DNA of 53,744 nucleotides, counting the filler, from Sluysia triapertura (Eukaryota), in assembly GCA_046118255.1 (NCBI GenBank). It is 4 parts of 4 records of this genome, joined end to end, with 100 filler letters (N's around TTAATTAATTAA, not from the genome) between each part and the next. Parts side by side here need not be neighbours in the genome. Positions count along the whole stretch, not along the records: positions 40,531 to 53,744 come from JBJNIA010052665.1; 3 more parts are not named here. One strand, 5' to 3'. Under the pieces are notes generated by a model. The model did not search any database. It was not told the origin of the DNA and was given only the letters and a program-made list of their open reading frames with translations. Position 1 is the stretch's first letter; each line of letters begins with the position of its first letter. The position numbers and the translations under genes are program-made. Below are positions 5,130 through 53,744 of the stretch, one piece after another.

Positions 5130-5910
5130 TATGAACAACTAATTACATGGGATGAATTATTTCACTAATTTATCACTAATTATCTTAAATTAATTATCAC
5201 AAATTTTCTCAGTTCATCATCAAGATAGTGCATCTATGATTTCGAATTTGCGTGGTAATTACAGTACCTTGTAACATTAAATCCTTTAAAACATCTTGGT
5301 TTCTTGCTATCTCCAATATTTTTAATTGATCCACTAACATTTGAACATAAAGCTATGGCTATTCTAACTTTAGATTGTTTTATGTGTTTTCTTTCACTTG
5401 ATGAAATCGTTCTTGTAGTTAATGCTTGAAAAAAATGTCCAGTTTTATCCATATTGAGTATGACTTCTGGGTCAATTTCTGCCAATTTTTCAAATATTTT
5501 TTTCTATTGGCTGAAACATCAGCATCATTCATTGAATTTACTTCTCCTGAACTTTCAATTTCAGAATAAATCGATTTTTGAATCTATAGAGCCATCCTGT
5601 GCTGAACTGCAGGTCATCAACATTTAGTTTTTATCCAAATTCCTTTGCTTTTGTAACGATAATTTCATCAGTCACGTAACTATTTATCGCATCCATTCGA
5701 TCAATGAATTCTCGAAGATGGTCTGGAGTAAGTGTTTGAGCTTTCACAATCTTCCCATTTCTCTTTATTTTTCAAAAATTTCTGATAACGTAGAAATTCC
5801 TAGGTCGAGGTTTAATTCTTTTCTGATAATTTGAAACATTTTCTTCGACTCCTTTATTGCAAATATTTTGCCTTTTGATGAATTGTAATTTATGTTCTTT
5901 TTCTAGCCAT
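5130..5910 (-). pseudogene. Tigger/pogo-family (CENP-B HTH + DDE_1) transposase pseudogene
   Basis: MARKRT*ITIHQK start, TDEIIVTKAKEF, LQFSTGWLYRFKNR (CENP-B-type HTH), ILNMDKTGHFFQALTTRT and KQSKVRIAIALCSNVSGS...IGDSKKPRCFKG (pogo/Tigger motifs); stops and frameshifts present. Confidence 0.9.
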
Positions 5911-29868: not shown

Positions 29869-32746
29869 GTTATTGTTGTTATTCTGTAATTACAATAAGA
29901 TTTCATAAATGATAGATTTAAAACAATTTTGATTTCATATTTTAAAATAAATGAGCAAGAAAACATTGCTATTACTAAATTATAATCTATCTCTATCTCT
30001 ATCTCTAACTGACTAGCCTGAAAATATTAATACTTCAAAAAATTAAATTTATTAATAAGATTTATTCTAATTCAGAAATAATAATAAATGTTTTATTTTT
30101 TAAATAATTTTTAATCTTCTTCTAGACACCTCTTAAGTATCTTGAATCTGAAGTGAACATTAAGGAGATTCGTAATTGTACTATTGAAATGCACAAACAT
30201 TAATTAAAGTAAAATCCACTAGCAAAGACAGAACCAAACCAATAGTTCATTCAATAATAACTAACAGTACACATGTCAAAAATGGGATTTCGCACTCCAT
30301 CACACATAGAAAAGTGCAATAATCACAATTAATAACAAAGATAACAACAAGACCAACTCTCTAACAAGAAAATCTCATGTAACACTATCTCAATGAATTG
30401 CTTTAATTACAAATAAAAGCAAAAGGAGAATTCAAAATCATTTAAAGATTATGAAATATTTAAGAGAAAGGCAAAGTTTCTTCAATTTCAGAAATATTAT
30501 AATGATTGATTAATTTTAAGCCCTTTGTAGTACTTATTCTATAGTAAATATTAACACATAAATTAATATTTTATTATGAATGATCATCGAAATAATTTTG
30601 TATTTTGTGTTAGTTGTTTAAATAATATAAGAAATCTTGTGATAATTCAAAAAATTATTTTCTTTAAATGTCACAATCAATAAACTTTCTAAACCAAATA
30701 GGAAAACATAAAAGTTCGAAAGGCACATACTTTAACGATTTAAAAAATATTGATCACACAAGATATCTTTTTAGTAATGAAGAGATGATGAAAAACAAAG
30801 TTTAACAAAATTTTTAAATTTAATCAAAAATTACTTTTTAATAAATTTAATCAAAAAACATTTTAATTTAAAATTTATAAAATTGTTTTGAAATAAAATT
30901 AAAATCATTATTGTAAAGGTTTAGAAATTTTTATTTTATTTTATATTTAAAAAATTGTAAAAATTATTATTTAAAAAATTAAAAAATTATTATTATAAAT
31001 TAATTCAAAGAAGGTTCGAGAATGGAACATTGTTTAATTAAATTAAATTTTAAATCTGTCTTTATATGTATATAAAGACAGACATAAAAAAGAAAGACTC
31101 CATTTTGAAATTATACGCCTTTGTAAAAATTCGTCATTGCTTATACATCATTCATCATTTACAATTCAATTTGATCGTCACCAGAAAACCATGTGACCAT
31201 TTTGTGGGATTCCGGCAATTCACAAATTCGCAAATCATTCAAAGGCATTATATCCCGCGTCTACGGTTAAAGGGATACAATTTTCCATTATCAAGCAGTC
31301 AAATTATTTAAGAAAAAATGGAACTATTTGAGAGCGCGAAAATTCGTAAATTTGTTTTACATAGTTTTCAAATTCAATTGGAGTTAAAATGTATACTTAA
31401 GTTTTTGGTTGGTCCTTAAGGCCAATCACAAAATCAGTTTAAAATCTAAATTCACTGCTCTTTAGTTGGTCCTTAAGATCAATTATAAAATGAGTATCAT
31501 ACGGTAGAGTCTCTCGGCTAGACCTTTATTATAACTCAACTTTTATCATTATCATAATTTTATTATTTATAAATTTTGGTATTATAGATATTTTCTCTTT
31601 TTGAATTTTATAAATTTATAGTAATTTTATTTTAGTTTTAATTGTCGTGTAATAAAAAATTAAACCTGTTGAGTCCTGTTTTTATTATAATTTTTCTAAC
31701 ATTAACATTGAAACCTAAATTAAGTTTATAGTTATTTCGCATTATGGTCAAATTACAATTAAATACATTTTTAGTTGAAAATACTTTGATTGCAATATAA
31801 TCTCATTAAATTTTCATAGGAATCAAAAATCTAACGTTCATTATATTAAGTTCTAACTAAGAGTTAAATATATATAAAGAACAATACGTTTCTATACAAA
31901 CATTATCAATTTTATTTTTACATTAACTCAAATATTACATAAGCCAGCTATTTAGTATGAGTTGACATAAACGACGATTTTGCCCACTATTGTTTAGGTT
32001 AAGGCAAAGCGAATTTTTATACGATTAGTTTTTTAAAATTGTTTTCACGAAATTTTACATTACGCCATTAGTAAGTCGCATACTGTAAACGGACTCTGAA
32101 TAATAATAATAATTTATTTTTCTGTAAGTTAGGTTTTTGTATAAAGAAAAACCCCCAACATTATTATTGGGATTATAATGTTTCTATTAATTTAAAATGA
32201 GATTACTTAAAATTAATATAAATTTAGAATTTAGTAACGAATAACAATTAATTTAGATTAAATGTGTATAAATAATCATTGTAATGTAAGATTTTATGAA
32301 GGCAATATGAAATTAAAATTTATAGACATTATAGTTATAGTTATAACTATAGTTAAGATGAAAATTAATAACAATATTAAATCAAACTTTAAGAATACAA
32401 AATCCGATTCGAATTATTTTAAAAACATGATTTAGAATACTATGTTGGGGTAAAAAATCCTAAAGTGCCATTTGGTAAAATTGACGTATTCCGTCTAATA
32501 ATATATTACTGCAGTCCTTAAGTTGCAAATTATTATTTTGTTCATTAATCACTAACTTATATGGTCCCGTATCTAAATACTCACTTATATCCTCATGCTT
32601 ATATTTTTCCTCTAATTATTTTACTATTTCAATTATAAGAGTAAGACATAAATTAAACTTTTCCTATTTATCACTATTATAGGTAATCATTGTTGGATCT
32701 ATGGAATTTCTATGGAATTAGGAGTTGCTAAATGGTCATCGTATTC

Positions 32747-34240
32747 TTATTTTCTTGGTCTTCCAGGTCTTATCTTAAGAGTATTTGTTTCTTTATTCAA
32801 CTTTATAAATGGATTATCATTGAAATCTAATATGTAATCGGGTTGTTTCGTATCAGTATCATTAATATTTTTCTTAACATCATTATCATCATTAACGACC
32901 ATTAAGTTCTTCATAAATGAGTGAAAGAAGTAATTCTTATATACATTATTTTTAAAGACATCGTTAGGGGTAGAATAACTAAGAGGTTTATAAACAATAG
33001 CAGCCTTTAATATATCATCATGAATTCCAAGAGGATATCCATAATCAATAAAAAATTCATCAGGTACTTCCTTCTCACGAAAACATGATTTAAAACTAAT
33101 TTAATTCAACTTAATCAAATTAATAATCTCATTGACCATTGTCGTAACAAGCAATTCCATTACAACATTTATCGAATCGTGATTAATATCTTAACATTCA
33201 TTAAAGTCTGTTAATTCATTTCTGCCTGTGCGATTTTCTTTAGTATTTTTCTTGCTTTAATCTTATATGGGCTATCTCTCTACTTATGATCGTCTTGAAC
33301 GTTTAAATCCGAATTATAACTTTCCTAAATTATTTTCAATGTTTTTGTATCACTTAAATTGAAAATAAATGTCTCAACTGTCTCGTTGGAAATTGTCTCT
33401 GTGTTATTAAAATTATTCTCATCATTAACAATGATTCCATTTATTTTGGTACAATTGCTTCTCAATGATTGTTGAATCGGTATTTCCGCCTGTTGCTGAT
33501 CCGTATTGTTGCTGTTATCACTTATTTCTACTTTTTTGCATTATTTGTTTCACGTATACTCTCCTCTTTTTTCATTTCTATATCATTCAACCCATCATTC
33601 CTCTTTTTGTCTGCATATCTTCTTTTTTATCGCTATATTCATCGTCTAATTTTATTCTTGAAAACTTCTCGATAAATTTATCTTCATTAAAACTTCTTTT
33701 ATTGTATTCTGTCGCCATTCTATACATTTCTAGTTCAAAATCGTGTTCCTACATTCTCCATCTTAGCTATTATAATAATTTTGTATTTTTTTACAATTAT
33801 AATTTATTTGGCATTTATTCTTATTGTTATCTTTATTAAACCTTACCTTTTTATCTGGATTCGGCTGTTTCTGGTAATCTTGCATGTTAGCGAGATTGTG
33901 GTTGAAAGTATTAGTATTTTAATTTCGGTGATAAAATTTTTAAAAATTCTTAATTATCTTTACTGTTACTTATGTAACTTATTTTATCCCGTTCTTCGAC
34001 TCGATATCTTTAGATACCTCATTATTTCTTAACAATATCTTTAAAATGTAAATCATCACATGTAAATTTACATAAGCTCTTAACTCTGAGCGTAAATCAT
34101 TTTTTAATTTGTCAATTAAAATATTTTCTTTCTTATCATCAGGGATTTTAGCTTTATCATGTTTATTTAAACCCTTTTTGCTTGCATCTTACTTTCCTGA
34201 ATCAGTTTTAGCAAAGGTTTATGGTCTCTAATAGTTCATC
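32747..34240 (-). pseudogene. Decayed Gag-like or LTR-retrotransposon-derived ORF ending in an AT-hook
   Basis: Minus-strand fragments KAKIPDDKKENILIDKLKNDLRSELRAY and TCDDLHFKDIVKK, a charged middle region, and C-terminus IRPGRPRK*. The + strand hydrophobic ORFs 33465-34032 are its antisense shadow. Family assignment is by resemblance only. Confidence 0.4.
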
Positions 34241-34689
34241 CGATTGTGCCGTTAAAAAAACGCATACATTAGAGTAGATACGACTAACAAAATAGATGAA
34301 CAAAATAAAAAATAATAAAACAAGACGATGACAGTGGGCATTACGATAATTTTTTGAAAACATTAGATTTAGATATTGTTACTACCTTTAATTAATATTT
34401 AATTTTAATTAACAGTCTTACCCTTTTAGTATTTTGTAAGATTATGTTTTATTAGCAAGAGAATGTGACTTAAACATTGATGTTGCTTGTAGGTATTTTG
34501 ACATGAGTTTAAGTTGAGGTTTGGGTATGTGTGTATATATGTTTAATGGCACATTATATTCAAATCAATGAACATTAAAAATTCCTCGAAATGATACAAA
34601 TTTGTTCTTTGCCAGCCACTGCTAAAAATTTAAAAAATTTTAATCACTAATTTATGGAGATGTGTGATTCAACTCTAACTACATATACC

Positions 34690-34755
34690 AGCTAGCAGCC
34701 AATCAGAAAAAAAGGAGAATTCTACATTTTCTAGAACTTTCTAGAAAATTCTTTT
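34690..34755 (-). promoter_or_regulatory. Heat-shock-element array with CCAAT box
   Basis: TTCTAGAACTTTCTAGAAAATTC (34729-34751) is a run of contiguous inverted nGAAn units; AGCCAATCAG at 34697-34706. Confidence 0.5.
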
Positions 34756-35306
34756 ACTTTTTTAGAAATTATTATTTCTGTTTTGGAAAATTAACTATTT
34801 TTATATTTTTAAAGATTTTAAAGGGTTATGATGGCCACTTAACATTGTTAATTGATAGTTATTAATGGTTACAGTTGTAAGGAATAATAAGACCCGTTCA
34901 AGAATTATTATAGATATGAATTTTGCATTTAAAAGAAATAAATCAGAAAATATTTTCAAAATTTGGCTTCCGAGTTGGGACCGAAAAGCTTCATTGATTC
35001 AAATATTATTAAGTTAATATATTTTGAAGTTGATAAGTAAGCATAAGTTGACATAAGTATAAAATTACATAAGTGATTTTATTTTGATACACGTGTATTC
35101 TTTTGAATAAGATGTAAGGTTTTCTTAATTACGAAAATTATAATTTTTGATTCGAGTCTCAATTATTGAAGTATAAGATTTGTGGTGTCTTAATTTTTCA
35201 CAAGTTCTCAACAAATTCAATTTCAAATATTTTATGCATATTACAACTTCGCTACATTTTGTACACACGATAACATCTAAAATAAAATTATAAATATATT
35301 TAAACT

Positions 35307-36860
35307 ATGGAAATTAATCATACTATTAATGCGTTTAATCCGCCAAAATCGCTTCTCTCATCTGCATTAACATCGTATTATTACTGCATCTTTTCCTTTT
35401 ATACTATTACTTATTACTTTTTGAAATGATGGAATATGACAGGAAAATGTTTTATAAACATTAATAGTCTATTTGGAAATTATCCGAAAAATAAGCCTGT
35501 CATCTCATATAGTTAGAGAAATTTATCGCAAAGAAAAATAGTAACAAAAGAAATTCCAAATAGACTGGATGTATCTACTAATAAAAATACGGATTATGTA
35601 TTTAATTTAATAAGAGATAGCTCAAATATTGTTCAAGATGTTTCATCTCTGAAATATTCTTTATATTCTGATAAAATAAATAGCGATATAGATCTTTTAA
35701 AAAATAAGTTGTTTCGTGGTACTTGTGCGAAAAATTATAAAGATTTTCATTTTTTGTTTTCTTTCACATGTTATAAAACGATAGATAAATGTTTTAAGAA
35801 GATAGATGAATGTGTATATTGTCGATCAACAAATTACTTAGATTAAAAAGTGCATTTAAAAAGCTGAAATTATTTACCTTGTTTTTATTTTGTTTAAATA
35901 TACTACAAAACAAGAAAAGAATATTTTTTAAATATTTGAAGTTTTATTATCAAGCTAATCTATATATCAGATATCAGTATGCGACATACGTAATTTAACG
36001 AAATTTGAACGAGTTCTCATTTTCTTGACATTAATTAACAGTAAGAAATTCATTTGTCAGGATTTGAAAAATTCAAAGTTTTAACCATAAATAAAAAGAA
36101 TATCTATCTACCAAGAGGATCCGACTGTGTTAAAGAAGAAACTTTTAATGATAATAAATCCAAAATTCAACTGTTATTATTTGAGTATTTTAAATCCCAG
36201 AGAAATTTTTCACTATCTAAGGATATTTGCCTTCGACCCAGTAATATAATTGATAACACTGTTCAAGCTTAGTTTTATCGAAAAAATACTGGATTCGGTT
36301 AACTTCACATAGGAGATTCAGATATTAGTGCAGCTTCAACTTCAGAAGTATTAAATATAGATAATTCAATACATGATATAACAATGACAACTTATCCTGT
36401 TAATTCTACAATATCAATACCAATAATTTATTTTCCATCGGAACTTCCAGTGCCAACTTAGATTGAAATCTTTCACAGTTAAATAGTAATGGATGCTGAA
36501 TTTGAAACTTATACATTCACTTCGATATTGAATACGGTATACTCTCAACTTTGACAAACTTCTGAATTACATTATTGATCATGGGGCGAAAGCATTTAGT
36601 GAGAAAAATGTGAAAATTATTCAGTTTAAAATCAAAAATTCAAAAGTTGAAGCTGATTTCGAATTTACGTTAGCTTATGCTGATGAAATGTTACGAAATC
36701 AAATACCTGGTTTCGTGAAAGATCCGCTTGTAGCATCATTCAGCGAGAACACAAAAGTTCCAAAAATTTCACATGCCAGTTGTGGAATCGAAAATTTAAC
36801 TCTATTTTAATTTCCAGTTACTTTCCTAAATCAACGAGTATACACAGATCTGTGATAATT
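35307..36860 (+). pseudogene. Disrupted intronless ORF of unknown family
   Basis: ATG 35307 (MEINHTINAFNPPKSLL), then protein-like blocks IPNRLDVSTNKNTDYVFNLIRDSSNIVQDV..., ORF 36054-36272 and ORF 36610-36810, separated by stops and frameshifts. Confidence 0.4.
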
Positions 36861-37421
36861 TGAGATACGATATCTATATAAATTTAAGGAATATTTTCAT
36901 AAAGAGCAATAGTTATCATAAATTTTGACATGGTTAGTGTAATGTCGTTCTCAGCAATTGGAATGGAGCTTCATCTAGCGTTTAGACTGAGTTTATATTT
37001 AGTACTACAACCATCAGTTTACAAATACATTTGATCTCATGAGAATATTATTTGATACTGCAGACGCTTTAGGTTATGCTTTTTTAGTTTTCAGATTTAT
37101 TAAAACCGCAATTTTGTGTATTCAAGTATATAAGTTTAAATATTTGTGTTATAAGGAATTTTTATGTTTGATAAAGTTTTATTTTAAATTCAATCTAGAT
37201 GTATATTCCGACTTCTGTTTTAAAGTTCAGTTTAATAATTCGAATAAAAGAAAGGATCTTAAGTCCATGTTCATTAATTTTAATTGCGTTAATAATGTTT
37301 TTAAAGATAAATATGTTTAAGCCCAAATTTTTTAACGTTCATAATTGTTTTGTCATAAATGATATGACGATTTTATACGCCAAACCTACAATCATAACCG
37401 GCCACCACAGGATTAATCTGA

Positions 37422-40530: not shown

Positions 40531-40719
40531 TATATTCGTGATTTTTTGTTTTTCCAAATAATAAAAACAAATCTCTTTTTACATATAATAAAAATTAAAC
40601 ATATGAAAACATTTCTGATTATTTTTTTACATTCAAAAATAAAAGATAAATCAATTTAATGACTTTACACTTACAGTATTTGAGGTTAATAATGAAATAT
40701 TTAGGTCTTATTGGTTTCC

Positions 40720-41482
40720 ATACATTTTTTACAGCTTATAGGGTTTAGCACATTTAGAACAAATTATTTTAGTTTTGTTTCCATTGCAATATTTATCTGG
40801 CACCACTGTTGAGCAGGTGAAACTGGTGGTACTTTTGCTTTTTTAGATTTTCTTTTTCATCTTCTTAACTTAAAAATTTTCTGCCAGCTCTTCGGCTTGT
40901 TTGAATAGAAACTTTTGCCTCAAAATGTTTTCACCCGTTGTCTCCTACATAACACCCACGCATTAATTCATTTCAGATCCAAAATATTGAAAAAAGCTTG
41001 CAACGGGCATCTTCGTGATTTAGATTTTATGGAGTATTTTCTTGCCATTTGATCTGACACATAAACACCAAATTTATTATTGTTGTAGAACCGGATTGTG
41101 TCTGGTTTACACTTTTTAGTGTCTTCAATTTTGATGGTTTTATTCTTTGAACTAAATATCAAAACCGTTTCATTGGCTTTACATTTGTTTTACTTTTACT
41201 ATGAGCGTAAAATGTTCTGATCTGAACAGATTACTTGAATAAAGGGACATGTTATCCTTCGCCTGTTTTGGCAAAAGTCCCGACGAGAGTAGTTCTTTTC
41301 TGCAGCAACTTTGAAGCCAGAGATAGACTTGTAAAAAAGTTATGTGTTATAACAGATGTTCCACATTTTGTCAAATTCTGATAATGGAACTGAAGAAATT
41401 TTGTCTTCATCCTTCTCCAGATATGGAAAACCATTTACACTGTATTTGGTCTTTATATCAGATGCCAACCAAATACCTCTAG
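40720..41482 (-). pseudogene. piggyBac (PGBD4-like) transposase pseudogene, 5'-truncated
   Basis: IWLASDIKTKYSVNGFPYLEK; VITHNFFTSLSLASKLLQKRTTLVGT; KPDTIRFYNNNKFGVYVSDQMARKYSIKSKSRRCPLQAFFNILDL; NAWVL..ETTGENI; C-terminal Cys-rich remnant. GGTCAATTGACC subterminal palindrome at about 41606. Confidence 0.93.
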
Positions 41483-41918
41483 ATACCTTTACATATATAT
41501 GTAATAACGTTATTTTATTAACATTTTTACATTTATAAACATTATAAGTACTTATATTACATAAAAACATATGAAAACCTCATGGTTGCATAGAATTTAA
41601 ATCATGGTCAATTGACCCGTCGCAATAATAAAAGCAAAAGTAAAAAACGTTATACGAAAAAGAAGAAATTAATGTTTTAAGAAAAGTCATTGCAAAAATA
41701 TATATAATTGGTGGTTTAATAAAAAAATCCTACAATAACCTTTAAACGGTGTGAATAATGTTAAGATCCCAATTAACCAGGATCTATGATAAAATTTTAA
41801 ATATTAGATTAACTGTGAATGATATATTTTAAGGGTATTTTGAAACAATATAAAATATTACTACGAAAGAAATGGGTTTAAAATAACTAATATGGTTAAT
41901 CAATAATATTAAATTATG

Positions 41919-41932
41919 ACACACACACACAT

Positions 41933-41967
<35 letters not shown>
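41919..41967. repeat. (AC)n(AT)n microsatellite
   Basis: Direct reading. Confidence 0.9.
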
Positions 41968-41974
<7 letters not shown>

Positions 41975-43829
41975 CCAAGATTAAAACTTACAATTATTAA
42001 TTTGAATTACTTAATTAAAAAAAATTTTTCAACAACCTTTTTTAAATGGTTGATTATTTAGTTTATACAAATTTTTAGTAGATTTTACAAACAAATTCTT
42101 GTTAAACTTATATAAATTCCAACTAACGTAACGAAAAATCTTGTATTCTATTCGAAAAAATCATCTAGAAAGAATCCTCTAATGTGCTTACCAAGAAATT
42201 AAAATTGATTGAATGATCAAAAATCAAGAATTAATTTTGCGTGACTTGTGTTAAAGTTGGTTATTTGAATATTTTTTCAAGGTTAAAAATAGTGCGTTAT
42301 TTTAATCAAGAATTGAAATAATGTTTTTAATTATTAAACTACTCAAAAATAATTGAGTATTTTAAATAATTAAAAATCATTTGATATTTTGAAATAAAAA
42401 GTAATTTGATTTTTTAGAAATAGAATACAAAATTATTTTTAGGTTATTGATTTATATAATATAAATAGTACTAATATGTAGTAGTCTATAAACAGCATGT
42501 AAATAAATATATTGATTGATTGACATTACAGAGTTAAGGATCAACTAGTATGTGTCAGTGAAAACGAGGTTTTTTTGAGGTCAAGAAAGATGCTATGGTT
42601 CGTTTAGAATTCCCTATTATAGCGAGGTTAGTTTTTTATTTAAATTTTATGAATGATCCATTTTATAAGGATCTTATATTTAAATGATTTTTAGTTATTA
42701 TAAATAACAATGTATTATTTTTTCTTGTATATTATAAATTTTTGAAATAATATAAATTATTTAATTAACTGTTTTAATTAAATTTAAATTAATGAAATTA
42801 AATTAAATTTTTTAATGAAATTTTCAATGTTCATTCACAAGAATTTAATAGTAATTATATTTATTTTCAAAAAAATATATACAAATATATGATCGTATTA
42901 ATATTTATTCAGAAAAACGTATACAATTTTAATAATTATAAATAACTTCAATTACATTATGAATATAATTTCTTTAATAGGATTATTTTTATCAAATTAT
43001 TTTTGACAGATAATTGTTTAACGTTAAAATCTATTAATATTTAAATAGACGATCTATTAAAACATTACTAAACAATTACAATTACGGTTTAAGTGTATTT
43101 TAATTATTTTCTAAAATTATCACATAAAATTAACTAACGAAGATTTTACAATTCAATTTAAATATCTAATTTTTGGAATTCTCAAATTGTTTGTTACGCG
43201 ATCACTCAATAAATAATTGTACAAAGAATTCAATATAATTAATTATAGAACTGAGGTTTATAAATTTCGTCCAAAATTTGTTCTATTCAAAATAACCAAA
43301 AATTTAGTGCAGTAAACAAATTTAAATGTAAATTTTTTTTATTTGATCACATTTATTTTATAGTCAATTTAAACTTTACGTGATGAAATTTCAATGTACT
43401 TATAATTTTAAATGACTATACCTCAATAATAATTTATAACAAGATTAGTTTAAAATAGGTATTTTTTAATAATATAATTATAATAATAAATAATGATTTT
43501 AATAAATAATAATAATGATAATAACAATAATAATGACTATTTTTACATCTTTATCAAAAAATATAAATTACATTTAATATTTTAAAAATAACATTTACTT
43601 CACAATTTAATCTTTATATATTTACATAATTTATACTATACTTTATACTTTTACATAAACTTTATAATTTATATTATTGTTATCATTTTATTATTATCAC
43701 TGTTGTACATTCATAATTTGTATTAATGAATAATTTTTAATTTTTATATTAATAATTGTATTAATTTTTATATTAATTTGTCATTAATGTACTTGTGTTT
43801 ATTAAAATTCTTAATTCACTTACTAAAGA

Positions 43830-44095
43830 TTTTTTGAAGGAATACAGTTTTTAGTAAGGTCGAAAAATCCTACGTAAACTATTCCTACTGAATTTGATTT
43901 AGTAAGGATACCGTTTTTAATTGAACGGTAGTAAAATCTTATGTAAACTACAAAATATTGTAGTTAGTTACTATCAAGACAAGTTTAAGATTTTACCCCA
44001 TTATTTTAAAAAATAAAACTCCACTATTATTCTTGCTGATACCTATGAACTAGCCATTAAGTGTATAAGTCTAGGATCGTAGAGACTCACGTATT
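43830..44095 (-). other. Structured non-coding element, copy B-minus
   Basis: Reverse complement of 44042-44092 is ACGTGAGTCTCTACGATCCTAGACTTATACACTTAATGGCTAGTTCATAGG, followed by GATTTTAC + hairpin TACCGTT/AACGGTA and TAGTTTACGTAGGATTTTTC modules. Confidence 0.6.
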
Positions 44096-44189
44096 ACTTT
44101 TCATATTACTATTAACTCAATATTTCGCTACATTATTATTAATATAAACCTAGATTATTGTGAGAAAAAAGTTTGTTTCTACTTTACTG

Positions 44190-44320
44190 CACGAGAATAA
44201 AAAATATAAGTGTGTGAGTTCATCAACATATCTAGTCTTACCACTTAGGGCTAGTCGTTGGATTTAAAAGCAAGATAAAACTTTAATGCTTATGGAGGTT
44301 CAATGTCCTACATAAACTAA
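44190..44320 (+). other. Structured non-coding element, copy B-plus (core only)
   Basis: GAGAATAAAA...GTGAGTTCATCAACATATCTAGTCTTACCACTTAGGGCTAGTCGTTGGA (44214-44262). Confidence 0.7.
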
Positions 44321-46857
44321 TAAATGACTAATAAAATTCTTTATTGCTTACTGTTTTTATTATCGGTTTATAGAATCGAAATTTTCTTAGCTAATTCTTA
44401 CTTTAATTTATTTTGGTTAAAAAATGAAATTGAATCTAGAGGTTTTATTTAAATTAACAAATTTTATTGATTCTTACTTAAACAGAACCATACAATCTTT
44501 TATGATTTAATTACTTTTGTTAAAAAAATATAATTAAGGAACACAAATAGTTAGAGAAAGTTTTATTGTACAAAATAAAATTATTATAATTACAAATAGT
44601 AAAATAAAAATGAAATTTTTTTTGAATTTCTTATTATACCAGAAATTCCTTGCAATTGAAGTTAAAAATGAAGATTTAATTCTTCCTATCAAATTAAACG
44701 ATAGGGTAAAACAACATGCAATATTTTAAGTGGAATTTAATCTGTAAACTTTTAAATGTTTACTAAAAACTTATTAAAATAAAACTAACGATTATTCAAT
44801 ATAAAGCAACAGAAAATTTAAATTGTTCACAGATGTAAGTATACGCAAACTGTTTGTAATTATACACTGACAAATTGTCACAAATCAAATTGTTCAAAAA
44901 ATCTGTAAGAATGTAATTGTGAAGTGAAAATTGTGAATTGTTAAACATTTGTGTTTGTATTTTTATAGTTTAATAATCTATAAAACAAAATATTACATTT
45001 TCAAAAATTTTCAAATATTATTACTCTAAAATTTTAAAATATTATTATTACTTTATTTTAGAATAAGATTTTAAAAAAATTATTATTATGATTTACAAAA
45101 ATATTACCTTACTAGCATATTCAAAATCCAGTTATTTACAATAAAAATCAATAATTATGTGTAATCACTATATAAAATCAATAATTAGTGTTAGTGTTAA
45201 CTGACAATATATTAATAAACAAATCTTATTACAGTGTAATAATTGAAAGTTTACGTTTGATAGAAGTATTTTAGGATGTAATAAGAGTGATAAGGCGATG
45301 TTAATATTATAAATGATTTATCTTAAGTTCTTTTGAATATTTGCAGTTAAATGTGATTAGTTTACCTATGAGTTCTAAAGATGTGATTGCTAAAAGTTTG
45401 TAAAATATGTAAGGTGTAGCGTGAAAAGTTATGGAAATTTTGAAATGTTAAGTGATTTATATTGAATGTTTATGAACATTTCATTGGTTCTAATTACTTT
45501 CTGTTAATTCTTGATCAGTACACTCCACTATATTTTTATGTTAAACATTCGAAACCAAATAAATTTAAAATTATTATACAATGAAAAATTTTATCTGTAC
45601 ATAGAGAACCGCAAGGATTGACAATAGATACACTATTATGTAAAACAGAAATTACAAAATACAATTTGTACAAAGATGTATTATTTAATGCATTCTTTTT
45701 GTTGAGTTACAGTTACGAATTGTGATAAAAGTTTAACTATTTATTTATACTTTATTTTATCTTTTATTTGATTTAGGAAATACAACGGAAATTTAATATT
45801 GTTACTTTGGAAACAAATAATAACGCCTTTGTGGATTTCTGACCAAAATATTTCTCAAATAAATTACATTTAATCAATGTTTCATAAACTTTATCTGAAT
45901 GTTTATCATAATCGGTTTAGATATTTGTTGTTTTATTTCAAATTAAATCAAAATTTTAATATACAAATACTGGAAATGAATTTTCAATTATTAAATTAAT
46001 ACATTTTTTGAAAATCAGAATTTTGAAATTATTATTTAAACTACATTAGTACTATTTTAATAATAATGTCGATATTGTGACCTCCATAATATATAAAATA
46101 TAAGATTACAAAAAATGAAGAAGTTAATTAAATGGAGTTAATAATCTATCATTTAATACAATGTTTTTTTAAAACTAAATAGTATTGTTTATTTCATATT
46201 TTTCATTAAAACTATTTTTCAAATAAAATAGGTATTTTTTTCATATCTTAAGCTTCATTGGTTTATAATTTTTGTTTATAAAAATAAATATGTATAGTAC
46301 ATTCACTGAAAAACTAAGAAACTGTTTATTTTTGTAAAGAGTTATGTAAATTATCTAGTTTAGCAAAATATGTGTTGTTTTACTGTATTTTATTTACAAA
46401 CAATTTGTAATAATACAAATAAATTACATAAAATGATTTACACGAGAAGAAAGTAAAATAAGAAATAAGCAATAAATATGAAGATCAGTACTGTTTATGG
46501 ACTTGACAAAGCATTTCTGTAAGTTAAAGTGACAGAAAAATAATATTCTCTTTTTCGGAACCAAAATGTTTGCATATTACTTGATGTTCTGGAAAATGGC
46601 AAACAATATACATTGAACAATAACAAACACTATTGGTATCGATGAGATATATGAAAATAAAACCTAAAGGGCCAAAATTAATATGAAAGAATTGATAGAA
46701 GAATTAAACTACCTGGTAATTGTTCGTTCTTCAAACATTTTTAAATGTGTTCTGAATTAATAGTTATTTTCAAGAAATATTTCGAATATATTTTGTAACA
46801 TTCGTGGAATGAAAAGAATTTTATTTTGAAAATGACTACAAATGCTTAAACAGTAAG

Positions 46858-46976
46858 ATTACATATTTACGTAAGATGAGATATTTATTATTGAATTAAT
46901 AGTAGGCTCACTTTTTAATGAATATTTAATGCTGTAATTCAATAATAAATAATCTCGTCATACGTAAATATGTAAT
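46858..46976. repeat. About 41-bp-arm inverted repeat (MITE-like foldback)
   Basis: ATTACATATTTACGTAAGATGAGATATTTATTATTGAATTA pairs with TAATTCAATAATAAATAATCTCGTCATACGTAAATATGTAAT with few mismatches. Confidence 0.75.
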
Positions 46977-47844
46977 GTTAGTATTCGATTTTTTTATATT
47001 TTATAAAATATATTAAAAATTTTATTGCCATATTAAAATATAACAAACATTGATTATTTTATTATTCGTTGTGATTAATTGACTTTGATTATTATTTTAC
47101 CAGAACTAATAATAATAAAAATATATCAAAGAACAACTTGATGACTCGGTAAACTAAAACAAAAAATATTCAGAATAATAAATTTCAGTACTATAAAGAA
47201 ACATTTATTAAAAGCGTTAACGATTGATATCAACCTAACAATAAATTCCATTTCCAGAAAACCTACTTAATTTATATTTCCTGTTTCTTTACTACATTTG
47301 TTATCAATAACTATTTTTCTTTTGTGCTAAATATTTTTCTAAAATTTAAGTTATTCGGTGAAATTTTGGTCAAAAAAATGTTAATTTATTTTGTTATTTT
47401 GTTTGATATTCTAATTTCTTAATAAAACCTATCTTTTGACAAAATTTTGTATATGTTTAGTTTTTATTAAGTTATTTTACTTTTAAACCACAAAAAGTGA
47501 GAGTTTCATTGCATTTTATTTGATATATCATCGTTCATCAATATTACATATTATTTTGCGAAACTTTTGCCATGTTCGATTACGAGGTAATCATAGAAGT
47601 CAAGACAAATCTAAGTAAAATATTATTTTATTTAATTATATTTGTTAATTTATTATTTGTAGGTTCAGAAACCTTAATTTAATAAATATATAAATTTGCA
47701 GTATTTAACTACCATTAAAAATAAACAAAATTGGTTACAATTAAATTAACACTTAAAATGCCCGTTATTTTTTGGAAACTTTATGTATACCACCGACTAC
47801 TTTGCAAAAATTGAAGACGCATGCATTCTTATACATAAAATTGT

Positions 47845-49120
47845 GTGATTTTAAAAGTAAATAAGATCCTTAGAGAATAAAATAAGATTTTTAAGTGCTA
47901 GGCTTACCGGTTAGGGCTAGCCGTTGGATTTATAGAGAAAATGTTTTTTAATTGAAGACGGGAATATCTTCCTAAAGTGTCTGCGAATTTATTGAGATAC
48001 TCAGTGAGTCTATTTAAATATTTTACTTTCTGTCAAATAACAATTAAATACTTAAATGCTTATCAATCAAATTTAGCTGAGTTCTGGAAGTATTTTAATA
48101 GAATTTATAATCAAATGGGGAGTTAATGCAAATATTTTACTAACTGAAAAATATTGGTTAAATTTTACATTATTAAAATAGTTTACGTAAATCCTGTGAA
48201 AAGGATTTGTAATGAATGATTTTACCGTATCAGAATTAAATTCTGATAAGTGAAAACTTTGCTTTAGTAGAGATTTTATATTTAAAACTATGAAAATTAA
48301 TTATTAATAAAAAGGAACTATCAAATAGTTTATATTATATACTTAGTATGATAAAAAAGAAATATAAAAATTGATAAATATATTGCGGAGAGTTAATCTT
48401 ATAAAAATAATAATTTAATAATTGATTTTATGGGAAATTATTATAAGTTTCGAAATTAATTACAAAAATTTTATTGTAAGTCGATTTTACGGGGAATCTT
48501 ATCGTATCCTAAACTTAATATAATAAACTAACGTAATATTCTGTGTAAAAGAAAAATCTGGTTGTAATATCTTCTTAATCTTACTCTTGTACGCACTTCT
48601 TCCGAATGAAATATTTATAAAAACTGGTTAACGTAGTATAAAATTGTGTGAAAAATTGTAAGTTTTATGCGTATTTATGTACTTAATTTAACTGGCCTTG
48701 GCCAAATTAAAACAAAACTATTTATTTAATTGTTAAAACAAAAATATTTCGATTAATAATTTTAAATTTGATTAATTTCAAAAAATATTAAAGTTTACAT
48801 TTAATTAATAAAATTACTTACTTTAGTTTAATTTAGATCCAAAATTAATAAAAGAATAATAATACAATTAATTTAAAAATCCAAAAATAATTCAGAAAAA
48901 TAAGCAATAAAAGAAATTAATCAATCAAAGTTCAATTAAAAATCAATCAATAATACAGAATGTAATAATTATAATAAACAAATGATAGTTCATGATTGTA
49001 TAAAATGAAATAACTCCTAAACAACAAATCATGTATTTATCAAAATTTCACATGATTTTAATAAATAAACGTTTTGCTCTACCGCTGGTCTACAATGATC
49101 GTGTTAATGCGTGGCCAGCA
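47845..49120 (+). other. Structured non-coding element, long copy C
   Basis: Core at 47898-47928; hairpins AAATCCT-GTGAAA-AGGATTT and ATCAGAAT-TAA-ATTCTGAT; long-range pair 48524-48536/48818-48830; collinear with copy D about 1.8 kb downstream. Confidence 0.75.
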
Positions 49121-49349
49121 CTTTAAGTGTTAACATATAAGTAAGATTTCTATATTTCAAAACAGCTTATACACATTAGAATATTATTTTAAAATCTTAG
49201 AAAATTTGTCTTTATACACTTTTGTTAAGTTGTCATCACAAAATACTCTAAAATTATGTATGTCTTTGCAAACATTTAAAATCACTTAAAATGTTTATTT
49301 TCCACAAAAATAAAATTTCTAAAAAATTCGCTTCTAAAAATAGAATTGA

Positions 49350-49425
49350 AACTTCTAGAATTTTCTAGGAAATTTCATCGATTCCCATTCGCCAATGACT
49401 ATTATATAAACTAGCATCAGTTTAG
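49350..49425 (+). promoter_or_regulatory. Promoter-like block: HSE-like array, CCAAT, TATA, Inr-like TCAGT
   Basis: TTCTAGAATTTTCTAGGAA (49353-49371), CCAAT (49392), TATATAAA (49403) and TCAGT (49417). TATA-Inr spacing is shorter than canonical. Confidence 0.5.
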
Positions 49426-49644
49426 TGAGAATCACCATTTTAAAATTTCAAGCTTTGTCAACCATTTTAAAAATTATTCGTCTCTATTTCGCTTTGAAAT
49501 TTTTATCAATTTCAGTCGCCATTTTACTTGTAGATGATTATTCGAGTTTTATTCAATACTGTCTATTGATTCGGAAGCAGTTTTTCCATGTTCTCCATAA
49601 GTTATTTTTATTAAGACATTACTAATAATAAAATATTAGTATCG

Positions 49645-50870
49645 TAACATTCGTGGGGATTTTAAAAGTAAGACTTATCCTTATAGAATAAAATATAATT
49701 TTAACGTGAGTCCACCAATATACTAGGCTTACCAGTTAGGGCTAGCTGTTGGAATTTTGCAATTAAAGAGATTAACAATATAACTCAATGCTTGCTTAAA
49801 TGCTTAGTGAATTTCAGTTAAATTGTGGAGGTATTTTAAAGAATTCAAGTATTTATTAAAAATAATTATTTAAGGAATAGTTTTCGTAAATCCTATGAAA
49901 AGGATTTGTAATTAATGATTTTTCGTCATCAGAATTAAATTCTAATAAAGCTTTTGATGGACGGGCGATTTTATCATTTTGAAACTATGTAAATTATTTA
50001 TTATACAAATAACAAGACTTTTTTTCCTCGAATGTATATTAATAAAAATTATACAAGAATTCAATAATTATAATTAAGAAATAAAATTGTTGTTTAAATT
50101 AAGTACCAGAGTTAATATTTTGTTTTACAATGGATTTTAATTTGATTCTTCGTAGGAACCGTTAAAAGGTTCCGTATATCTTTAAAATAGATTTTTAGTA
50201 GATTTTACATTGGATACTTATAAGTATCAAATCCTACAAAAATAAACTAACGTGTTATAAATTATTCTATTGTTAAATAAAAAGAAAGTTCAATCAGTGG
50301 GATGATCTTTCAGAAGAAATGTCTCGAAAATATAATTCTATTATGATATCAAGTGGAGAGAAGTTTTCCTTATATATTCAAAATCAACGAAGCGCGGTTG
50401 TAATTTTTTGAAATTTTATTCTGTATCGTGAAATTTTTTCACGCGTATTTATGTATATTTTGTAGTGGCCATGAAAAAATTTAAAACAAAACTATTTAAA
50501 ATGAAATAATTTTGAAAAATAAAATAATTTAGAACTATTTAAATGATTTTTCTAAATTAATAAGCACTTACGTTAGTTTAATTCTTTAAAAAGAATTATT
50601 TTCCACAAATATTATTAAAATATAGTAATTTGTTCAAACATCGAAAAAATTAACTATTGTTATAAATAAATATGATAATGATGTATATAAATCGATAATC
50701 AGTTAAAACTAAAACGTGTATTACAATGTCCAATAACATAAATACAAATATACAGATTAATATACAGATTACATCATCACAAATATATGAAATTTTATCG
50801 CATTAGATTTTATTCTGATGTGCTTTATCAATATTTTAAAAGTGATTTTATCACCGACTTAAGCCACCCC
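49645..50870 (+). other. Structured non-coding element, long copy D
   Basis: Core at 49704-49753; hairpins AAATCCT-ATGAAA-AGGATTT, GGAACC/GGTTCC and GATACTT/AAGTATC; long-range pair 50243-50254/50569-50580. Confidence 0.75.
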
Positions 50871-53500
50871 AAAAATGATATAAAAGTTACGTGTAGTTTA
50901 TAGTTTATATATAATTTAATTACACTCTCCGACAAATTAAGCGCTAAACATTCTTTAAAATTTTATTTATGGAGTAGGATTATCCATGAGATTTTACACA
51001 AATTTAACATCCTTTTATAAATCCATTAACTTTTAGATAAATTTTAGAATATAAAATAAAATTATTTTCATTTATTATTAAAAATGCATTAAATAAATTA
51101 TGTTTTAGACGTAACCGTAAAGTAAATGGATTCATTAATTTTTTGCATAAAGTTAAGTAAAATGCATTAATATTTACAATTAAATACACTAACTCTTATT
51201 TAATAATGATCATCACAATTTGAATTTTATAAATCTAAATTCTGACAGAAAAATAGAAAAGATTACAAAACCAAAGAAAACACAAAATTCTGCATAGATA
51301 GAAGAAAGAATGAAAATAAAATTAAAAAAATGTAAAATGCCAGTCTATAGAAAATGGAATTATGATTACAAAACTCACAAATAATAATTATATTCATAAT
51401 AATATTAATGTATATCATCAAATAAAACCATATCAAAATAACTCTAAAAATTAAAAATGGAAGTACAATTAAAAAACAGTGTTGGGACTAGTGAAGGATA
51501 AGGGGAACGTAAGGGTCATGATTCAGGATAACAAAATAAAATAAACATCATTGAAGAATTAAGATAATGATGAAATATTACGAATTATGTCGACATAGAT
51601 AACATAAAAAATAGTTATTTTTTATAATTTAAGTATACGTTTCAGTAAAGTATCAGTAAAGTATATATTAAATTAATGCTCATGAATATACCAATTTAAA
51701 TATGTTATTGAACTTGACGTGCAACGTACGGTATTATGATAATATAGATTACTGCAGAAAAATAAATTTATTATTCCATTAATTTCATCCTTAATTTAAG
51801 TTAATAAACTGCGTTATTGATAGAATAGCTATTAAATGATATTACATTTTAATGTAATAGTGCTTTAAAGGGATTGTTTACCACAAATCCAATTATCTTT
51901 AGATAATTAAAAAGATAATGAAATTGGACACAAGTAGAAATTATAGTCGAAATTTAATAAGTAAAATTGGTCGGACTATCACTGACTAAAAAGAATAGCA
52001 GTTTAAATTTCCATCTTGTTCAATTTCCAATTTTCAATTCCCCAAATGATCGTAAAACTTTTATATAAGCAGTCATATTTTTGCAGAAAATCAGAAACAG
52101 AATAACAAAACAAGAATAGGGAAAGACAATAACGAAATTGCAAACTTTTTAGCTTTAGGGACGCTGCTTCAATCCATCCATGGAAAACGACGAAAATGAG
52201 TTATAAGAAAAAGGGCTAGTAACTTGTTTTTTATTCATTATATTTTTGTTTGAGTTGTGAATTTATGGTAGTAATTTGTTAATATTAAAAGATTTATAAT
52301 TTTAAAAGGTTTATAATCAAAGACAATTCATTAATAAAGAATAATTTTTATTATTATGAAGAATTTTGTTGTATAATTGTGATTTATTAAAAAATATATC
52401 GAGACTCTGAATTTATTTAGTTATGTGGTTTTAATTTGATAATTTAAAATTAAAAGTATTAAAAACACAACAATAGCAATAATAATGATAATGACAATAA
52501 TAATAAGCCAAACATAACAAAATTCCAAATAAAATCGTACCTAAACCACTGAAAAATGCGCAACTAAAAAATCTAACATAAGTCTGAAAAATTATTCAAG
52601 TAACGTTTCTAATAAAAATTGATAAATCACACTATATACAAATGAAGCATCAAAGACTAATAAATTTAAAAATACAATTAAAAATTAAAATAGAAAAACC
52701 AATGCAAATAATTTTTACATGATATTAATAACATGATGAACAAATAATAAAAATATTCACGAAAATTTTCCACTAAAATTGTGAATTTAAATAATTAGAA
52801 TTTCGTCTAAAATAATTAGAGGATAAATAAAATTTTTAACTACGAAAAGAAATGATTTTTTAATGTAAAAAACTCAGCTATAAGTATTAGTGTCGCACAA
52901 ACCCAAAACTATGATCTATTAAAAACAATTTCCCCTAATAGAAAAAGAAAATCACGGTATAGATAAATACTTCACCAACCAATTCCATAATAACATTAAA
53001 CCTCAAACTTCCAGAAATTAATCATTCTACTGTAACTCAAATAATGGAAACCCAAAACAACGAAACTACTTCAGCCAACTCTGACATGAAAAAAATAAAA
53101 ATAGGAGATATCCTACACAAATTCTAAGAACACAGCAGAAAAAAACTGTCCAGTGTAACTACAAATAACGAAACTAATCTGTCAAAAACAAACAACTAAT
53201 CTCCATATATTTATTCGTCTTAGAAGAAACACTGTCTTAAATGAAAAGATGGAGTCTGAACACACATCCTTTAATAAGGAAGTACTTATGGGTAAATAGA
53301 TTCGAGAAACTTGACCACAAGATCAAAACATATTTAATGATTGCACAATGTTAGACGAAGTGGTATGGAGGATAATATTATTAAGTACAAAGACGATCAC
53401 ATAAATTTCACAGTAAAAGCTTCGAAATCACTAAAATACAATATAAATACAACATAAAAGATAAAAGATATGTTAAGTGGTTTTTACAGGTATAATAAAG

Positions 53501-53501
<1 letters not shown>

Positions 53502-53550
<49 letters not shown>
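53502..53550. repeat. (ATT)n microsatellite
   Basis: Direct reading. Confidence 0.95.
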
Positions 53551-53551
<1 letters not shown>

Positions 53552-53678
53552 TACATTTGTAATACTATTATTGTAATTGTTAATTATTTAAAATTAAGAT
53601 TTAATGGAAAGATAAAATGTTTATGCCTGAGAATGAATTGTAAAATAAGATTGTATAATGTTATTAATAATTTTAATT

Positions 53679-53744
<66 letters not shown>
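53679..53744. repeat. (AAT)n microsatellite at window end
   Basis: Direct reading. Confidence 0.95.

What the first reader, a model, noticed from the sequence alone, without database searches (positions are those of the whole stretch)
47845..50870. Unnamed family of about 1.2-kb structured non-coding elements (tandem copies C and D, dispersed copy A)
Seen: three long copies (700-1800 minus, 47845-49120 plus, 49645-50870 plus) keep the same order of short conserved blocks: AGAATAAA, a nested core hairpin (GTGAG-led in A and D), GATTTTAC-hairpin modules, TAAACTAACGT, TGGCC motif, TAC(G/T)TTAGTTTA. The intervening AT-rich sequence is barely alignable, and no long ORF is present. Neutral decay of an ordinary repeat should erode sequence roughly uniformly, so this patchy conservation centred on stems suggests selection on a folded single strand. 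Inference: a large structured RNA (IRES-like leader, structured intron or mobile ncRNA) or an ssDNA origin/recombination cassette of an unclassified mobile or viral element. I do not recognise it as any known RNA family.
Basis: partly seen in the sequence, partly recalled or inferred. Interest (0 to 1): 0.85.

Follow-up and report, generated by a model that had tools for sequence, protein, structure and literature searches.

The report
Decayed copies of a high-copy transposon
The two roughly 1-kb look-alike stretches are old, separately inserted copies of a very abundant non-coding mobile element in an AT-rich animal-type genome; I found no support for a conserved structured RNA, so the finding is ordinary.

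Summary
The repeat is real. C and D share the same ordered blocks at 72-89% identity, with near-random sequence between them. They hold no ORF over 76 aa, no Pfam domain, no tRNA and no Rfam match.

They are not tandem copies and are not 1.2 kb. Family homology runs 47845-48833 in C and 49655-50585 in D.

C is a discrete insertion (47842-48999) inside a TTAA-flanked MITE. Two contigs of the one public run that holds this DNA join the MITE halves without C. They show a 7-bp target duplication, ATAAAAT. C ends in a 166-nt tail that is 56% A and has no terminal inverted repeats.

In that run, 11,405 contigs match the 5.5-kb stretch at 80% or more. Summed depth is 30,000-37,000 over the first block and 500-5,400 over the bodies. 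Unique flanks have 12-35.

Folding is no better than in the flanks. Hairpins are no more frequent than in shuffled sequence. Only 1 of 21 hairpins is fully kept in the other copy. Stems are not significantly better conserved (p = 0.12).

Best reading: decayed copies of a non-autonomous interspersed repeat, probably mobilised like a LINE-dependent retroposon. The class is not proven.

The parts
47835..47841 (.). Left copy of the 7-bp target-site duplication ATAAAAT of insertion C
   Evidence: In one search a joint runs from 47834 to 49000 (skips 1165) with 7 letters that fit both sides. The sequence was read and the match is listed.
47842..48833 (+). Copy C, the family unit (992 bp) homologous to D: head, hairpin modules and an inverted-repeat-bracketed 3' module
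   Evidence: Alignments. Summed contig depth is 1,000-30,000 against 12-35 in unique flanks.
47898..47931 (+). Block 1 core in C: an imperfect 9-bp hairpin built of telomere-repeat-like hexamers. It is the most abundant part of the family. C lacks the 14 nt just upstream that D and the family have.
   Evidence: (D3). One search gives depth 29,744 in bin 47788-47971 and a loose end at 47898 in 182 contigs.
48177..48306 (+). Block 2 in C. It holds two perfect palindromic hairpins (48189-48208 and 48228-48248) and a GATTTTAC motif.
   Evidence: 79% identity, E 2e-26; z -4.35.
48519..48833 (+). 3' module of C, bracketed by 13-nt inverted arms (TAAACTAACGTAA / TTACTTTAGTTTA)
   Evidence: The same module has 43-nt arms in D and 57-nt arms in fragment F.
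48834..48999 (+). A-rich tail of insertion C (56% A). It is not alignable to D and appears to be low copy.
   Evidence: its A fraction is in the top 0.3% of 166-nt windows. It lies inside the insertion defined.
49000..49006 (.). Right copy of the 7-bp target-site duplication ATAAAAT
47746..47834 (.). Left half of the TTAA-flanked host MITE into which C inserted (context, not part of the family)
   Evidence: The terminal inverted repeat TTAACACTTAAA sits at 47746-47757 and, inverted, at 49122-49133 (p<0.003). A unique contig of run X1 ends at 47748.
49007..49133 (.). Right half of the host MITE.
49653..50585 (+). Copy D, the family unit (933 bp)
   Evidence: Depth falls 37,300 > 5,448 > 1,799 > 1,435 > 661 along it. 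A unique contig of X1 starts at 50600.
49706..49756 (+). Block 1 core in D, complete with the GTGAG-led 5' arm
   Evidence: At 49719 nearly all contigs read C where D has T, so D carries private changes.
49876..50003 (+). Block 2 in D. The first hairpin is intact; the second is broken by an uncompensated change.
   Evidence: D2; z -1.18.
50235..50585 (+). 3' module of D, bracketed by inverted arms 50235-50277 and 50512-50554 that extend to 50585
   Evidence: (43 nt, 74%).
50586..50946 (+). Possible tail of D with uncertain extent. Candidate duplications are TAACAT (49645-50 / 50734-39) or AACATTC (49646-52 / 50947-53).
   Evidence: neither match is significant on its own. A content is 43-47%.
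44150..45130 (+). Probable third, more decayed copy (E1), with its head at 44194-44273 and AAACTAACG at 44782 in colinear position. Its right end is a guess.
   Evidence: (D3).
43826..43975 (-). Inverted fragment with two block-2-like modules (TAGTTTAC.. + GATTTTAC + hairpin)
42042..42459 (+). Partial copy F: block 3 (42042-42107) plus the inverted-repeat-bracketed module (arms 42108-42163 / 42407-42459)
   Evidence: D5; 57 nt, 82%.

Best explanation
C and D are two separately inserted, mutationally decayed copies of an abundant, non-coding, non-autonomous interspersed repeat (a transposable element family) of a very AT-rich eukaryotic genome.

The family is modular:
- a roughly 110-nt head with a short hairpin made of telomere-repeat-like hexamers, by far the most abundant part;
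- a body with a few short palindromes;
- a roughly 320-bp module bracketed by inverted repeats;
- in C, an A-rich tail followed by a 7-bp target-site duplication.

Most likely mechanism (inferred, about 45-50%): the element is copied through an RNA intermediate and inserted by target-primed reverse transcription, using the enzymes of an autonomous LINE in trans. It would be read from the + strand. The variable A-rich tail and the short duplication would come from that process.

The conserved blocks are what subfamilies of the repeat still share. The palindromes are built-in features of the element. They are decaying in individual copies and are not being maintained at these loci.

Shown: repetition, high abundance, no coding capacity, a discrete nested insertion with a duplication, no terminal inverted repeats, and no excess folding.

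Inferred: the retroposon mechanism, the orientation, and the role of the head.
For: Abundance:
- 11,405 contigs of run X1 match 46500-52000 at 80% or more.
- Summed depth is 29,744 and 37,300 over the heads and 475-5,448 over the bodies, against 12-35 in unique flanks.
- 76 to more than 120 distinct contigs cover single head positions.
- At many positions nearly all contigs differ from C or D, so each copy carries private substitutions.

Discrete insertion:
- Two contigs join 47834/47836 to 49000/49036, and 7 letters fit both sides of the joint.
- The joined flanks form a MITE with TTAA ends and 16-nt terminal inverted repeats.

Retroposon-like layout:
- Neither C nor D has terminal inverted repeats (p 0.18-0.59).
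- C's tail is 56% A, in the top 0.3% of windows.
- Fragment F lacks the 5' blocks.

Non-coding:
-.

Not a known RNA:
-.

No structural selection:
-.

Subfamily and mosaic structure:
- C's inter-block positions 48320-48476 are covered by 16-42 contigs at 80% or more.
- Contigs also join block 1 directly to block 2 (joint 47931 to 49888).
Against: - Only one target-site duplication (C) has independent support. The shorter side of that joint is only 24 letters, and the tool warns about such joints.
- D's duplication is only a candidate.
- C's tail does not end in pure A.
- No partner LINE or shared 3' end was found.
- T runs of 4 or more start at nt 8 and number 14-32 per copy on either strand. 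That argues against Pol III transcription, so the element is not a classical SINE.
- The depth gradient (head far above body) would also fit 5' truncation of an element read from the minus strand, so the orientation is open.
- Depth from contigs is not a copy number, and X1 may be the sample the window came from.
- GATTTTAC is followed by a hairpin more often than random windows are (p = 0.014, n = 8). Block 2 of C folds very well (z -4.35). Some hairpins may therefore matter for the element itself.
- No consensus could be built, because only 2-3 copies are readable.
Confidence: 0.78

Rival explanations
1. The family is a DNA-mediated element: a composite of nested MITE-like modules or an unclassified cut-and-paste or rolling-circle transposon. 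It would move as DNA, and the palindromes and GATTTTAC motifs would be binding sites for a transposase.
For: - The 3' module is bracketed by inverted repeats of 13-57 nt in C, D and F, like a MITE.
- Short motifs and palindromes recur.
- piggyBac remnants and a TTAA MITE show that DNA transposons are active or were active in this genome.
- The windows that fold well do so on both strands, as DNA palindromes do.
Against: - The ends of insertion C and of D have no terminal inverted repeats.
- C's ends are not 5'-TC/CTRR-3', and C has a 7-bp duplication, which Helitrons lack.
- C has a copy-specific A-rich tail inside the insertion.
- No transposase or Rep/helicase remnant lies in or next to the copies.
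Confidence: 0.2
2. One reading: a family of large structured non-coding RNAs (a mobile ncRNA, leader or intron), with stems kept by selection while the spacers drift.
For: - Conservation between C and D really is patchy.
- Block 2 carries two perfect hairpins with z -4.35.
- GATTTTAC is followed by hairpins of differing sequence in some copies (p = 0.014).
- A 32-nt core is nearly identical in a distant animal contig.
Against: - There is no Rfam family.
- Fold stability shows no excess over the flanks or over shuffles for the heads.
- Hairpin counts equal the shuffles.
- Stems are not significantly better conserved (p = 0.12), and 20 of 21 hairpins are not fully kept in the other copy.
- Changes in the core hairpin are wobble or disruptive, never compensatory.
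- The very high copy number, private mutations in each copy and a nested insertion are the pattern of a transposon.
- No RNA run holds the sequence, which says nothing either way.
Confidence: 0.06
3. A local segmental or tandem duplication of one sequence, or a long-period satellite, rather than a dispersed mobile family.
For: C and D lie in the same orientation 1,811 bp apart start to start.
Against: - The spacers after C and after D are unrelated.
- C sits inside a MITE while D does not.
- Further copies lie in both orientations elsewhere in the piece.
- Thousands of contigs match the stretch.
Confidence: 0.02
4. A single-stranded-DNA replication origin or viral cassette, with GATTTTAC acting as a nick-site-like motif next to hairpins.
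For: TGATTTTAC resembles the TAATATTAC/TAGTATTAC nonanucleotide at 7 of 9 positions. This comparison is from my own knowledge and was not tested with a tool. Hairpins lie nearby.
Against: - The motif lies outside the hairpins, not in the loops.
- No Rep-like ORF or any Pfam domain was found.
- Viral contig scans found nothing.
- The composition is that of the host genome.
Confidence: 0.01

Closest known systems
Non-autonomous non-LTR retroposons (SINE-like, LINE-dependent elements)
   Same: - It is non-coding.
- It has a head, a body and an A-rich tail, followed by a short target-site duplication.
- It has no terminal inverted repeats.
- Its copy number is very high.
- Its modular ('jigsaw') composition includes a head shared by more copies than the body.
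- It has a short core that is also present in a distant animal, like the conserved central domains of SINE superfamilies (MetaSINEs, PMC4824008; mollusc SINEs, PMC4758252).
   Different: - At 990-1,160 bp it is longer than SINEs usually are.
- The head shows no detectable tRNA, 5S or 7SL origin.
- Many T runs would stop Pol III.
- The tail does not end in pure A.
- No partner LINE was identified.
MITEs / TIR DNA transposons (such as the TTAA-flanked MITE that hosts copy C)
   Same: - It is AT-rich and non-coding.
- It carries internal inverted repeats and palindromes.
- It is abundant.
- It nests with other elements.
   Different: - The ends of the insertion have no terminal inverted repeats.
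- A 7-bp duplication is seen only once.
- It has an A-rich tail.
- It is longer than most MITEs.
Helitron-derived non-autonomous elements (for example DINE-1-like)
   Same: - It is a roughly 1-kb non-coding element.
- It has conserved blocks separated by variable AT-rich or repeat regions.
- It has stem-loops.
- It is abundant in arthropod-type genomes.

This comparison is from my own knowledge.
   Different: - The ends of C are not 5'-TC and CTRR-3'.
- C has a target duplication.
- There is no terminal hairpin 10-12 nt from the 3' end.

Membership tests
SINE (SINEBase sense) | Head derived from a tRNA, 5S rRNA or 7SL RNA with an internal Pol III promoter | tested here: not met
   ARAGORN found no tRNA. 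Rfam gave no tRNA, 5S or 7SL match at E<=1 on the piece or at E<=10 on the head of D.
SINE (SINEBase sense) | Short length (roughly 80-700 bp) and a body free of Pol III terminators (T runs) | tested here: not met
   The units are 992 and 933 bp. C has 14 runs of four or more T on the + strand and 32 on the - strand; D has 27 and 26. The first run starts at nt 8.
LINE-dependent non-autonomous retroposon | Target-site duplication of variable length flanking the insertion, and no terminal inverted repeats | tested here: met
   C has a 7-bp duplication supported by two empty-site contigs and no terminal inverted repeats. D has only candidate duplications of 6-7 bp.
LINE-dependent non-autonomous retroposon | A-rich or simple-repeat 3' tail that differs between copies | tested here: inconclusive
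   C's tail is 56% A, in the top 0.3% of windows. D's tail is 43-47% A. Neither ends in pure A.
LINE-dependent non-autonomous retroposon | 3' end shared with an autonomous LINE of the same genome | not testable with these tools
   Only 13.2 kb of this genome can be read, and no LINE ORF lies in it.
MITE / TIR DNA transposon | Terminal inverted repeats at the ends of the insertion | tested here: not met
   A local alignment of the first 80 nt against the reverse complement of the last 80 nt gave p 0.18 for C and 0.18-0.59 for D. The host MITE, used as a positive control, gave p<0.003.
Helitron | 5'-TC and CTRR-3' ends, a subterminal 3' hairpin, and insertion between A and T without duplication | tested here: not met
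   C begins TGTGTG and ends GATTGT, and it is flanked by a 7-bp duplication.
Solo LTR | 5'-TG...CA-3' ends and a 4-6-bp duplication | tested here: not met
   C starts with TG but does not end in CA, in any register allowed by the 7-bp ambiguity. The duplication is 7 bp.
Any Rfam RNA family (ribozymes, IRES, group I/II introns and others) | A match to a covariance model | tested here: not met
   The only hit in the piece is a low-complexity mir-297 match at E 0.9, outside the element. Nothing credible was found on the head.
SINE superfamilies with conserved central domains (CORE, V, Deu, Ceph, Meta, Nin and others) | Sequence match of the core to a published central domain | not testable with these tools
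   The consensus sequences are not in the searchable text. No supplements are held for the two papers checked.

The most novel reading that the evidence does not exclude
The head core (about 32 nt, built of degenerate telomere-repeat-like hexamers) is a deeply conserved domain of an undescribed, cross-phylum superfamily of non-autonomous retroelements. It is 31/32 identical in an unrelated 43%-GC animal contig, where it sits in a 182-bp unit flanked by 18-nt direct repeats. The hairpin-plus-motif modules would be cis-signals needed for its mobility. On this reading the family would be a new kind of long retroposon that is not transcribed by Pol III.
Probability: 0.1. Interest if true: 0.5.

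Novelty: new member of a known kind. Interest (0 to 1): 0.2.

Why it matters
The main value is a correction. Patchy conservation plus hairpins between two repeat copies in a 20%-GC genome is what modular, decaying transposon subfamilies look like, and it is not evidence for a structured RNA.

For annotating this genome, the result gives:
- a usable definition of one abundant repeat family: unit limits, head, an inverted-repeat-bracketed module and one clean nested insertion with its target duplication;
- several neighbouring repeat families flagged for follow-up.

One item has wider interest. The 32-nt head core recurs almost unchanged in a distant animal. If that holds up, it points to an old conserved retroelement domain.

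Tried and rejected
- Rfam was run on the piece (E<=1), on the head of D (E<=10) and on L003. It found nothing relevant except a true 5S gene in L003.
- ARAGORN found no tRNA.
- A protein-database search with the 75-aa spurious ORF across block 2, meant to fish out other copies, found no candidates.
- Pfam on 16 stop-free pieces of C, D and neighbours gave only piggyBac fragments outside the element. A six-frame look at 51100-53500 showed nothing coding.
- Pattern scans for the head core gave mixed results. The first metagenome pattern found 0 hits. The 18-mer found 3 hits: 2 bacterial chance matches and 1 animal contig, L003. The genome collection gave 0 hits, then 2 bacterial chance matches. 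The viral collection gave 0 hits twice.
- A literature search for 12-13-mers of the core found 0 papers. No supplements were held for two SINE superfamily papers.
- Two fold-scan scripts timed out without output. The scan was redone over 45000-52500.
- A 5S-rRNA origin of the head was considered because of a shared CGGTTAG. It was rejected because Rfam does not see it.
- A hammerhead or other ribozyme (retrozyme) origin was rejected for the same reason.
- Only one sequencing run holds the sequence and none is RNA, so expression could not be examined.
Full report
**Setting.** The piece (40531-53744) is 13.2 kb of about 22% GC DNA with AT/AAT microsatellites. It has no ORF longer than 76 aa, no tRNA and no credible Rfam match. 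The composition and content are those of a repeat-rich intergenic region of an AT-rich eukaryote, probably an invertebrate animal.

- C and D align colinearly on the + strand.
  - Block 1: 47847-47931 / 49658-49756, 73% identity, E 2e-13.
  - Block 2: 48177-48306 / 49876-50003, 79%, E 2e-26, with a 73-nt core at 89%.
  - Block 3: around 48480-48535 / 50200-50255, holding GATTTTAC and TAAACTAACGT.
  - Block 4: 48663-48833 / 50437-50583, 71-80%.
- Over all aligned columns C and D are 63% identical. C aligned to five unrelated stretches gives 48-52%, so the inter-block sequence is close to random.
- Homology stops at 48833 in C and 50585 in D. The units are therefore about 990 and 930 bp, not 1.2 kb.
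- The piece also holds a third, more decayed + strand copy (head 44194-44273, AAACTAACG at 44782 in colinear position). There is an inverted fragment with two block-2-like modules (43826-43975) and a partial copy (42042-42459).
- Copy A lies outside the piece and was not examined.

**C is a discrete insertion in another transposon.**
- The sequence left of 47835 and right of 49006 forms one element, with TTAA ends and terminal inverted repeats. TTAACACTTAAA lies at 47746-47757 and inverted at 49122-49133, matching at 15 of 16 positions.
- In the only public run that holds this DNA (X1, Logan contigs), one contig joins 47834 directly to 49000, with 7 letters fitting both sides. A second joins 47836 to 49036 through a diverged version of 49004-49035.
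- The 7 letters are ATAAAAT, at 47835-47841 and 49000-49006.
- C is therefore a 1,158-bp insertion (47842-48999) with a 7-bp target-site duplication, nested in a piggyBac-type MITE.
- The shorter side of the first joint is only 24 letters, so this evidence is good rather than perfect.
- A unique contig of X1 ends at 47748, exactly where the MITE begins.

**The family is very abundant.**
- At 80% likeness or more, 11,405 contigs of X1 lie on 46500-52000.
- Unique flanks have summed depth 12-35.
- The two head bins have 29,744 and 37,300. The bodies have 475-5,448, falling steadily along D (5,448 > 1,799 > 1,435 > 661 > 475).
- 76 to more than 120 distinct contigs cover single head positions.
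- At many positions almost all contigs read a different letter from C or D (for example 47942, 48320, 48438, 49719, 49754). Each copy therefore carries private substitutions relative to a family consensus.
- 182 contigs diverge from C just before 47898, where C lacks 14 nt that D and the family have.
- Contig depth is not a copy number, and X1 may be the source sample. The qualitative conclusion, a high-copy dispersed family with the head far more common than the body, is still safe.

**Why conservation is patchy.**
- C's 'unalignable' spacers (48320-48476) are covered by 16-42 contigs at 80% or more. They are conserved within a C-like subfamily.
- Other contigs join block 1 directly to block 2 (47931 to 49888).
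- The 3' third of the unit is a module bracketed by inverted repeats: 13-nt arms in C, 43 nt in D and 57 nt in fragment F.
- The family is therefore modular. C and D are different mosaics or subfamilies that share some modules.
- Slippage-prone AT-rich stretches also lose alignability fastest. This last point is inference.

**Tests of the structured-strand idea.**
- The head folds no better than shuffles (z -0.2 to -0.75).
- A 100-nt window scan over 45000-52500 gives mean z -0.24 / -0.22 inside C and D and -0.02 / -0.04 outside (p 0.40 / 0.56). The outliers (48150-48249, 50150-50249) fold equally well on both strands, as DNA palindromes do.
- Perfect hairpins of 6 bp or more number 12 in C and 14 in D, against 10.2 +/- 2.5 and 9.8 +/- 2.4 in shuffles.
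- Stem columns are 69% identical and other aligned columns 63%. 12% of circular shifts do as well. Without block 2 the figures are 65% against 62%.
- Of 21 hairpins, one (AAATCCT / AGGATTT) is fully kept in the other copy.
- The second block-2 hairpin is intact in C (z -4.35) and broken in D (z -1.18). The block-3 hairpin is intact in D and absent in C.
- In the core hairpin, the three copies differ by a wobble and a U-U break, never by a compensatory pair.
- One residual hint remains. The 36 nt after GATTTTAC fold better than random windows (p = 0.014, n = 8). The homologous module in the inverted fragment has a different hairpin. That could reflect a cis-signal of the element itself.

**What kind of element is it?**
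- It has no coding remnant.
- It has no terminal inverted repeats at the ends of C or D (p 0.18-0.59; the control MITE gives p<0.003).
- It has no Helitron ends and no LTR ends.
- C carries a 7-bp duplication and a 166-nt tail that is 56% A, in the top 0.3% of windows. That tail does not align with D's.
- This layout (head, body, variable A-rich tail, short duplication) is that of a non-autonomous retroposon inserted by target-primed reverse transcription. That is my preferred mechanism, at about 45-50%.
- It is not a classical SINE. The head has no tRNA, 5S or 7SL signal. The unit is about 1 kb and has 14-32 runs of four or more T on either strand, the first at nt 8. By established knowledge these would terminate Pol III.
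- The orientation is not settled. The head-to-body abundance gradient would also fit 5' truncation of an element read from the minus strand.
- A DNA-mediated composite of MITE-like modules remains a serious alternative, at about 20%.

**A side result.** The 18-mer at the centre of the head occurs in one animal-type metagenome contig (L003, 43% GC, with a true 5S rRNA gene).
- There, 31 of 32 nt match the head core.
- It sits beside clean TTAGGG repeats, of which its 5' half is an 89% variant.
- It lies between 18-nt direct repeats spaced 182 bp start to start.
- The head core thus looks like a degenerate telomere-repeat-like array that is conserved in order and variants between distant animals.
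- I could not test whether it equals a published SINE central domain.

**Verdict.** This is a real, previously unclassified (to these tools) but ordinary high-copy transposable-element family. The structured-RNA interpretation is not supported. The element class is probable, not proven.

Noticed in passing
window 40968-41434, minus strand: Two colinear stop-separated fragments match the piggyBac transposase domain (PF13843) at profile positions 200-238 and 290-343, with E 1.5e-4 and 6e-3. This is a decayed piggyBac-like transposase gene.
   Followed up: partly
window 47746-47834 plus 49007-49133: A roughly 220-bp MITE with TTAA at both ends and 16-nt terminal inverted repeats, split by insertion C. 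It is moderately repeated in run X1.
   Followed up: yes
window 49260-49443: An unrelated, extremely abundant repeat (summed contig depth 53,480) lies just upstream of D. It carries three CCATTTTA-type motifs and folds well on the minus strand (z about -3).
   Followed up: no
window 51284-52000: Further very abundant repeats, with depth 7,000-121,000 and many internal joints among contigs. One contig links 48421 in C to 51382, so this repeat may adjoin C-like bodies elsewhere in the genome.
   Followed up: no
L003:717-811 (metagenome contig Ga0056124_1037809): An animal contig with a 5S rRNA gene (2029-2147) and an exon-like ORF. The exon call is my own reading and was not tested. The contig carries a 31/32 match to the head core next to (TTAGGG)-type repeats, between 18-nt direct repeats at 660-677 and 842-859.
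   Followed up: partly
window 53502-53550 and 53665-53744: (ATT)16 and (TAA)26 microsatellites in opposite orientation form a near-perfect 49-52-nt inverted repeat at the edge of the piece. This is probably just simple-sequence DNA.
   Followed up: no
window 41914-41981: An (AC)n/(AT)n microsatellite gives a weak mir-297 Rfam hit (25 bits, against a gathering score of 90). It is a low-complexity artefact.
   Followed up: yes
window 43826-43975 and 44150-44273: A block-2-like fragment on the minus strand lies head-to-head with the head of copy E1 on the plus strand. This could be two insertions or an inversion, and it was not resolved.
   Followed up: partly
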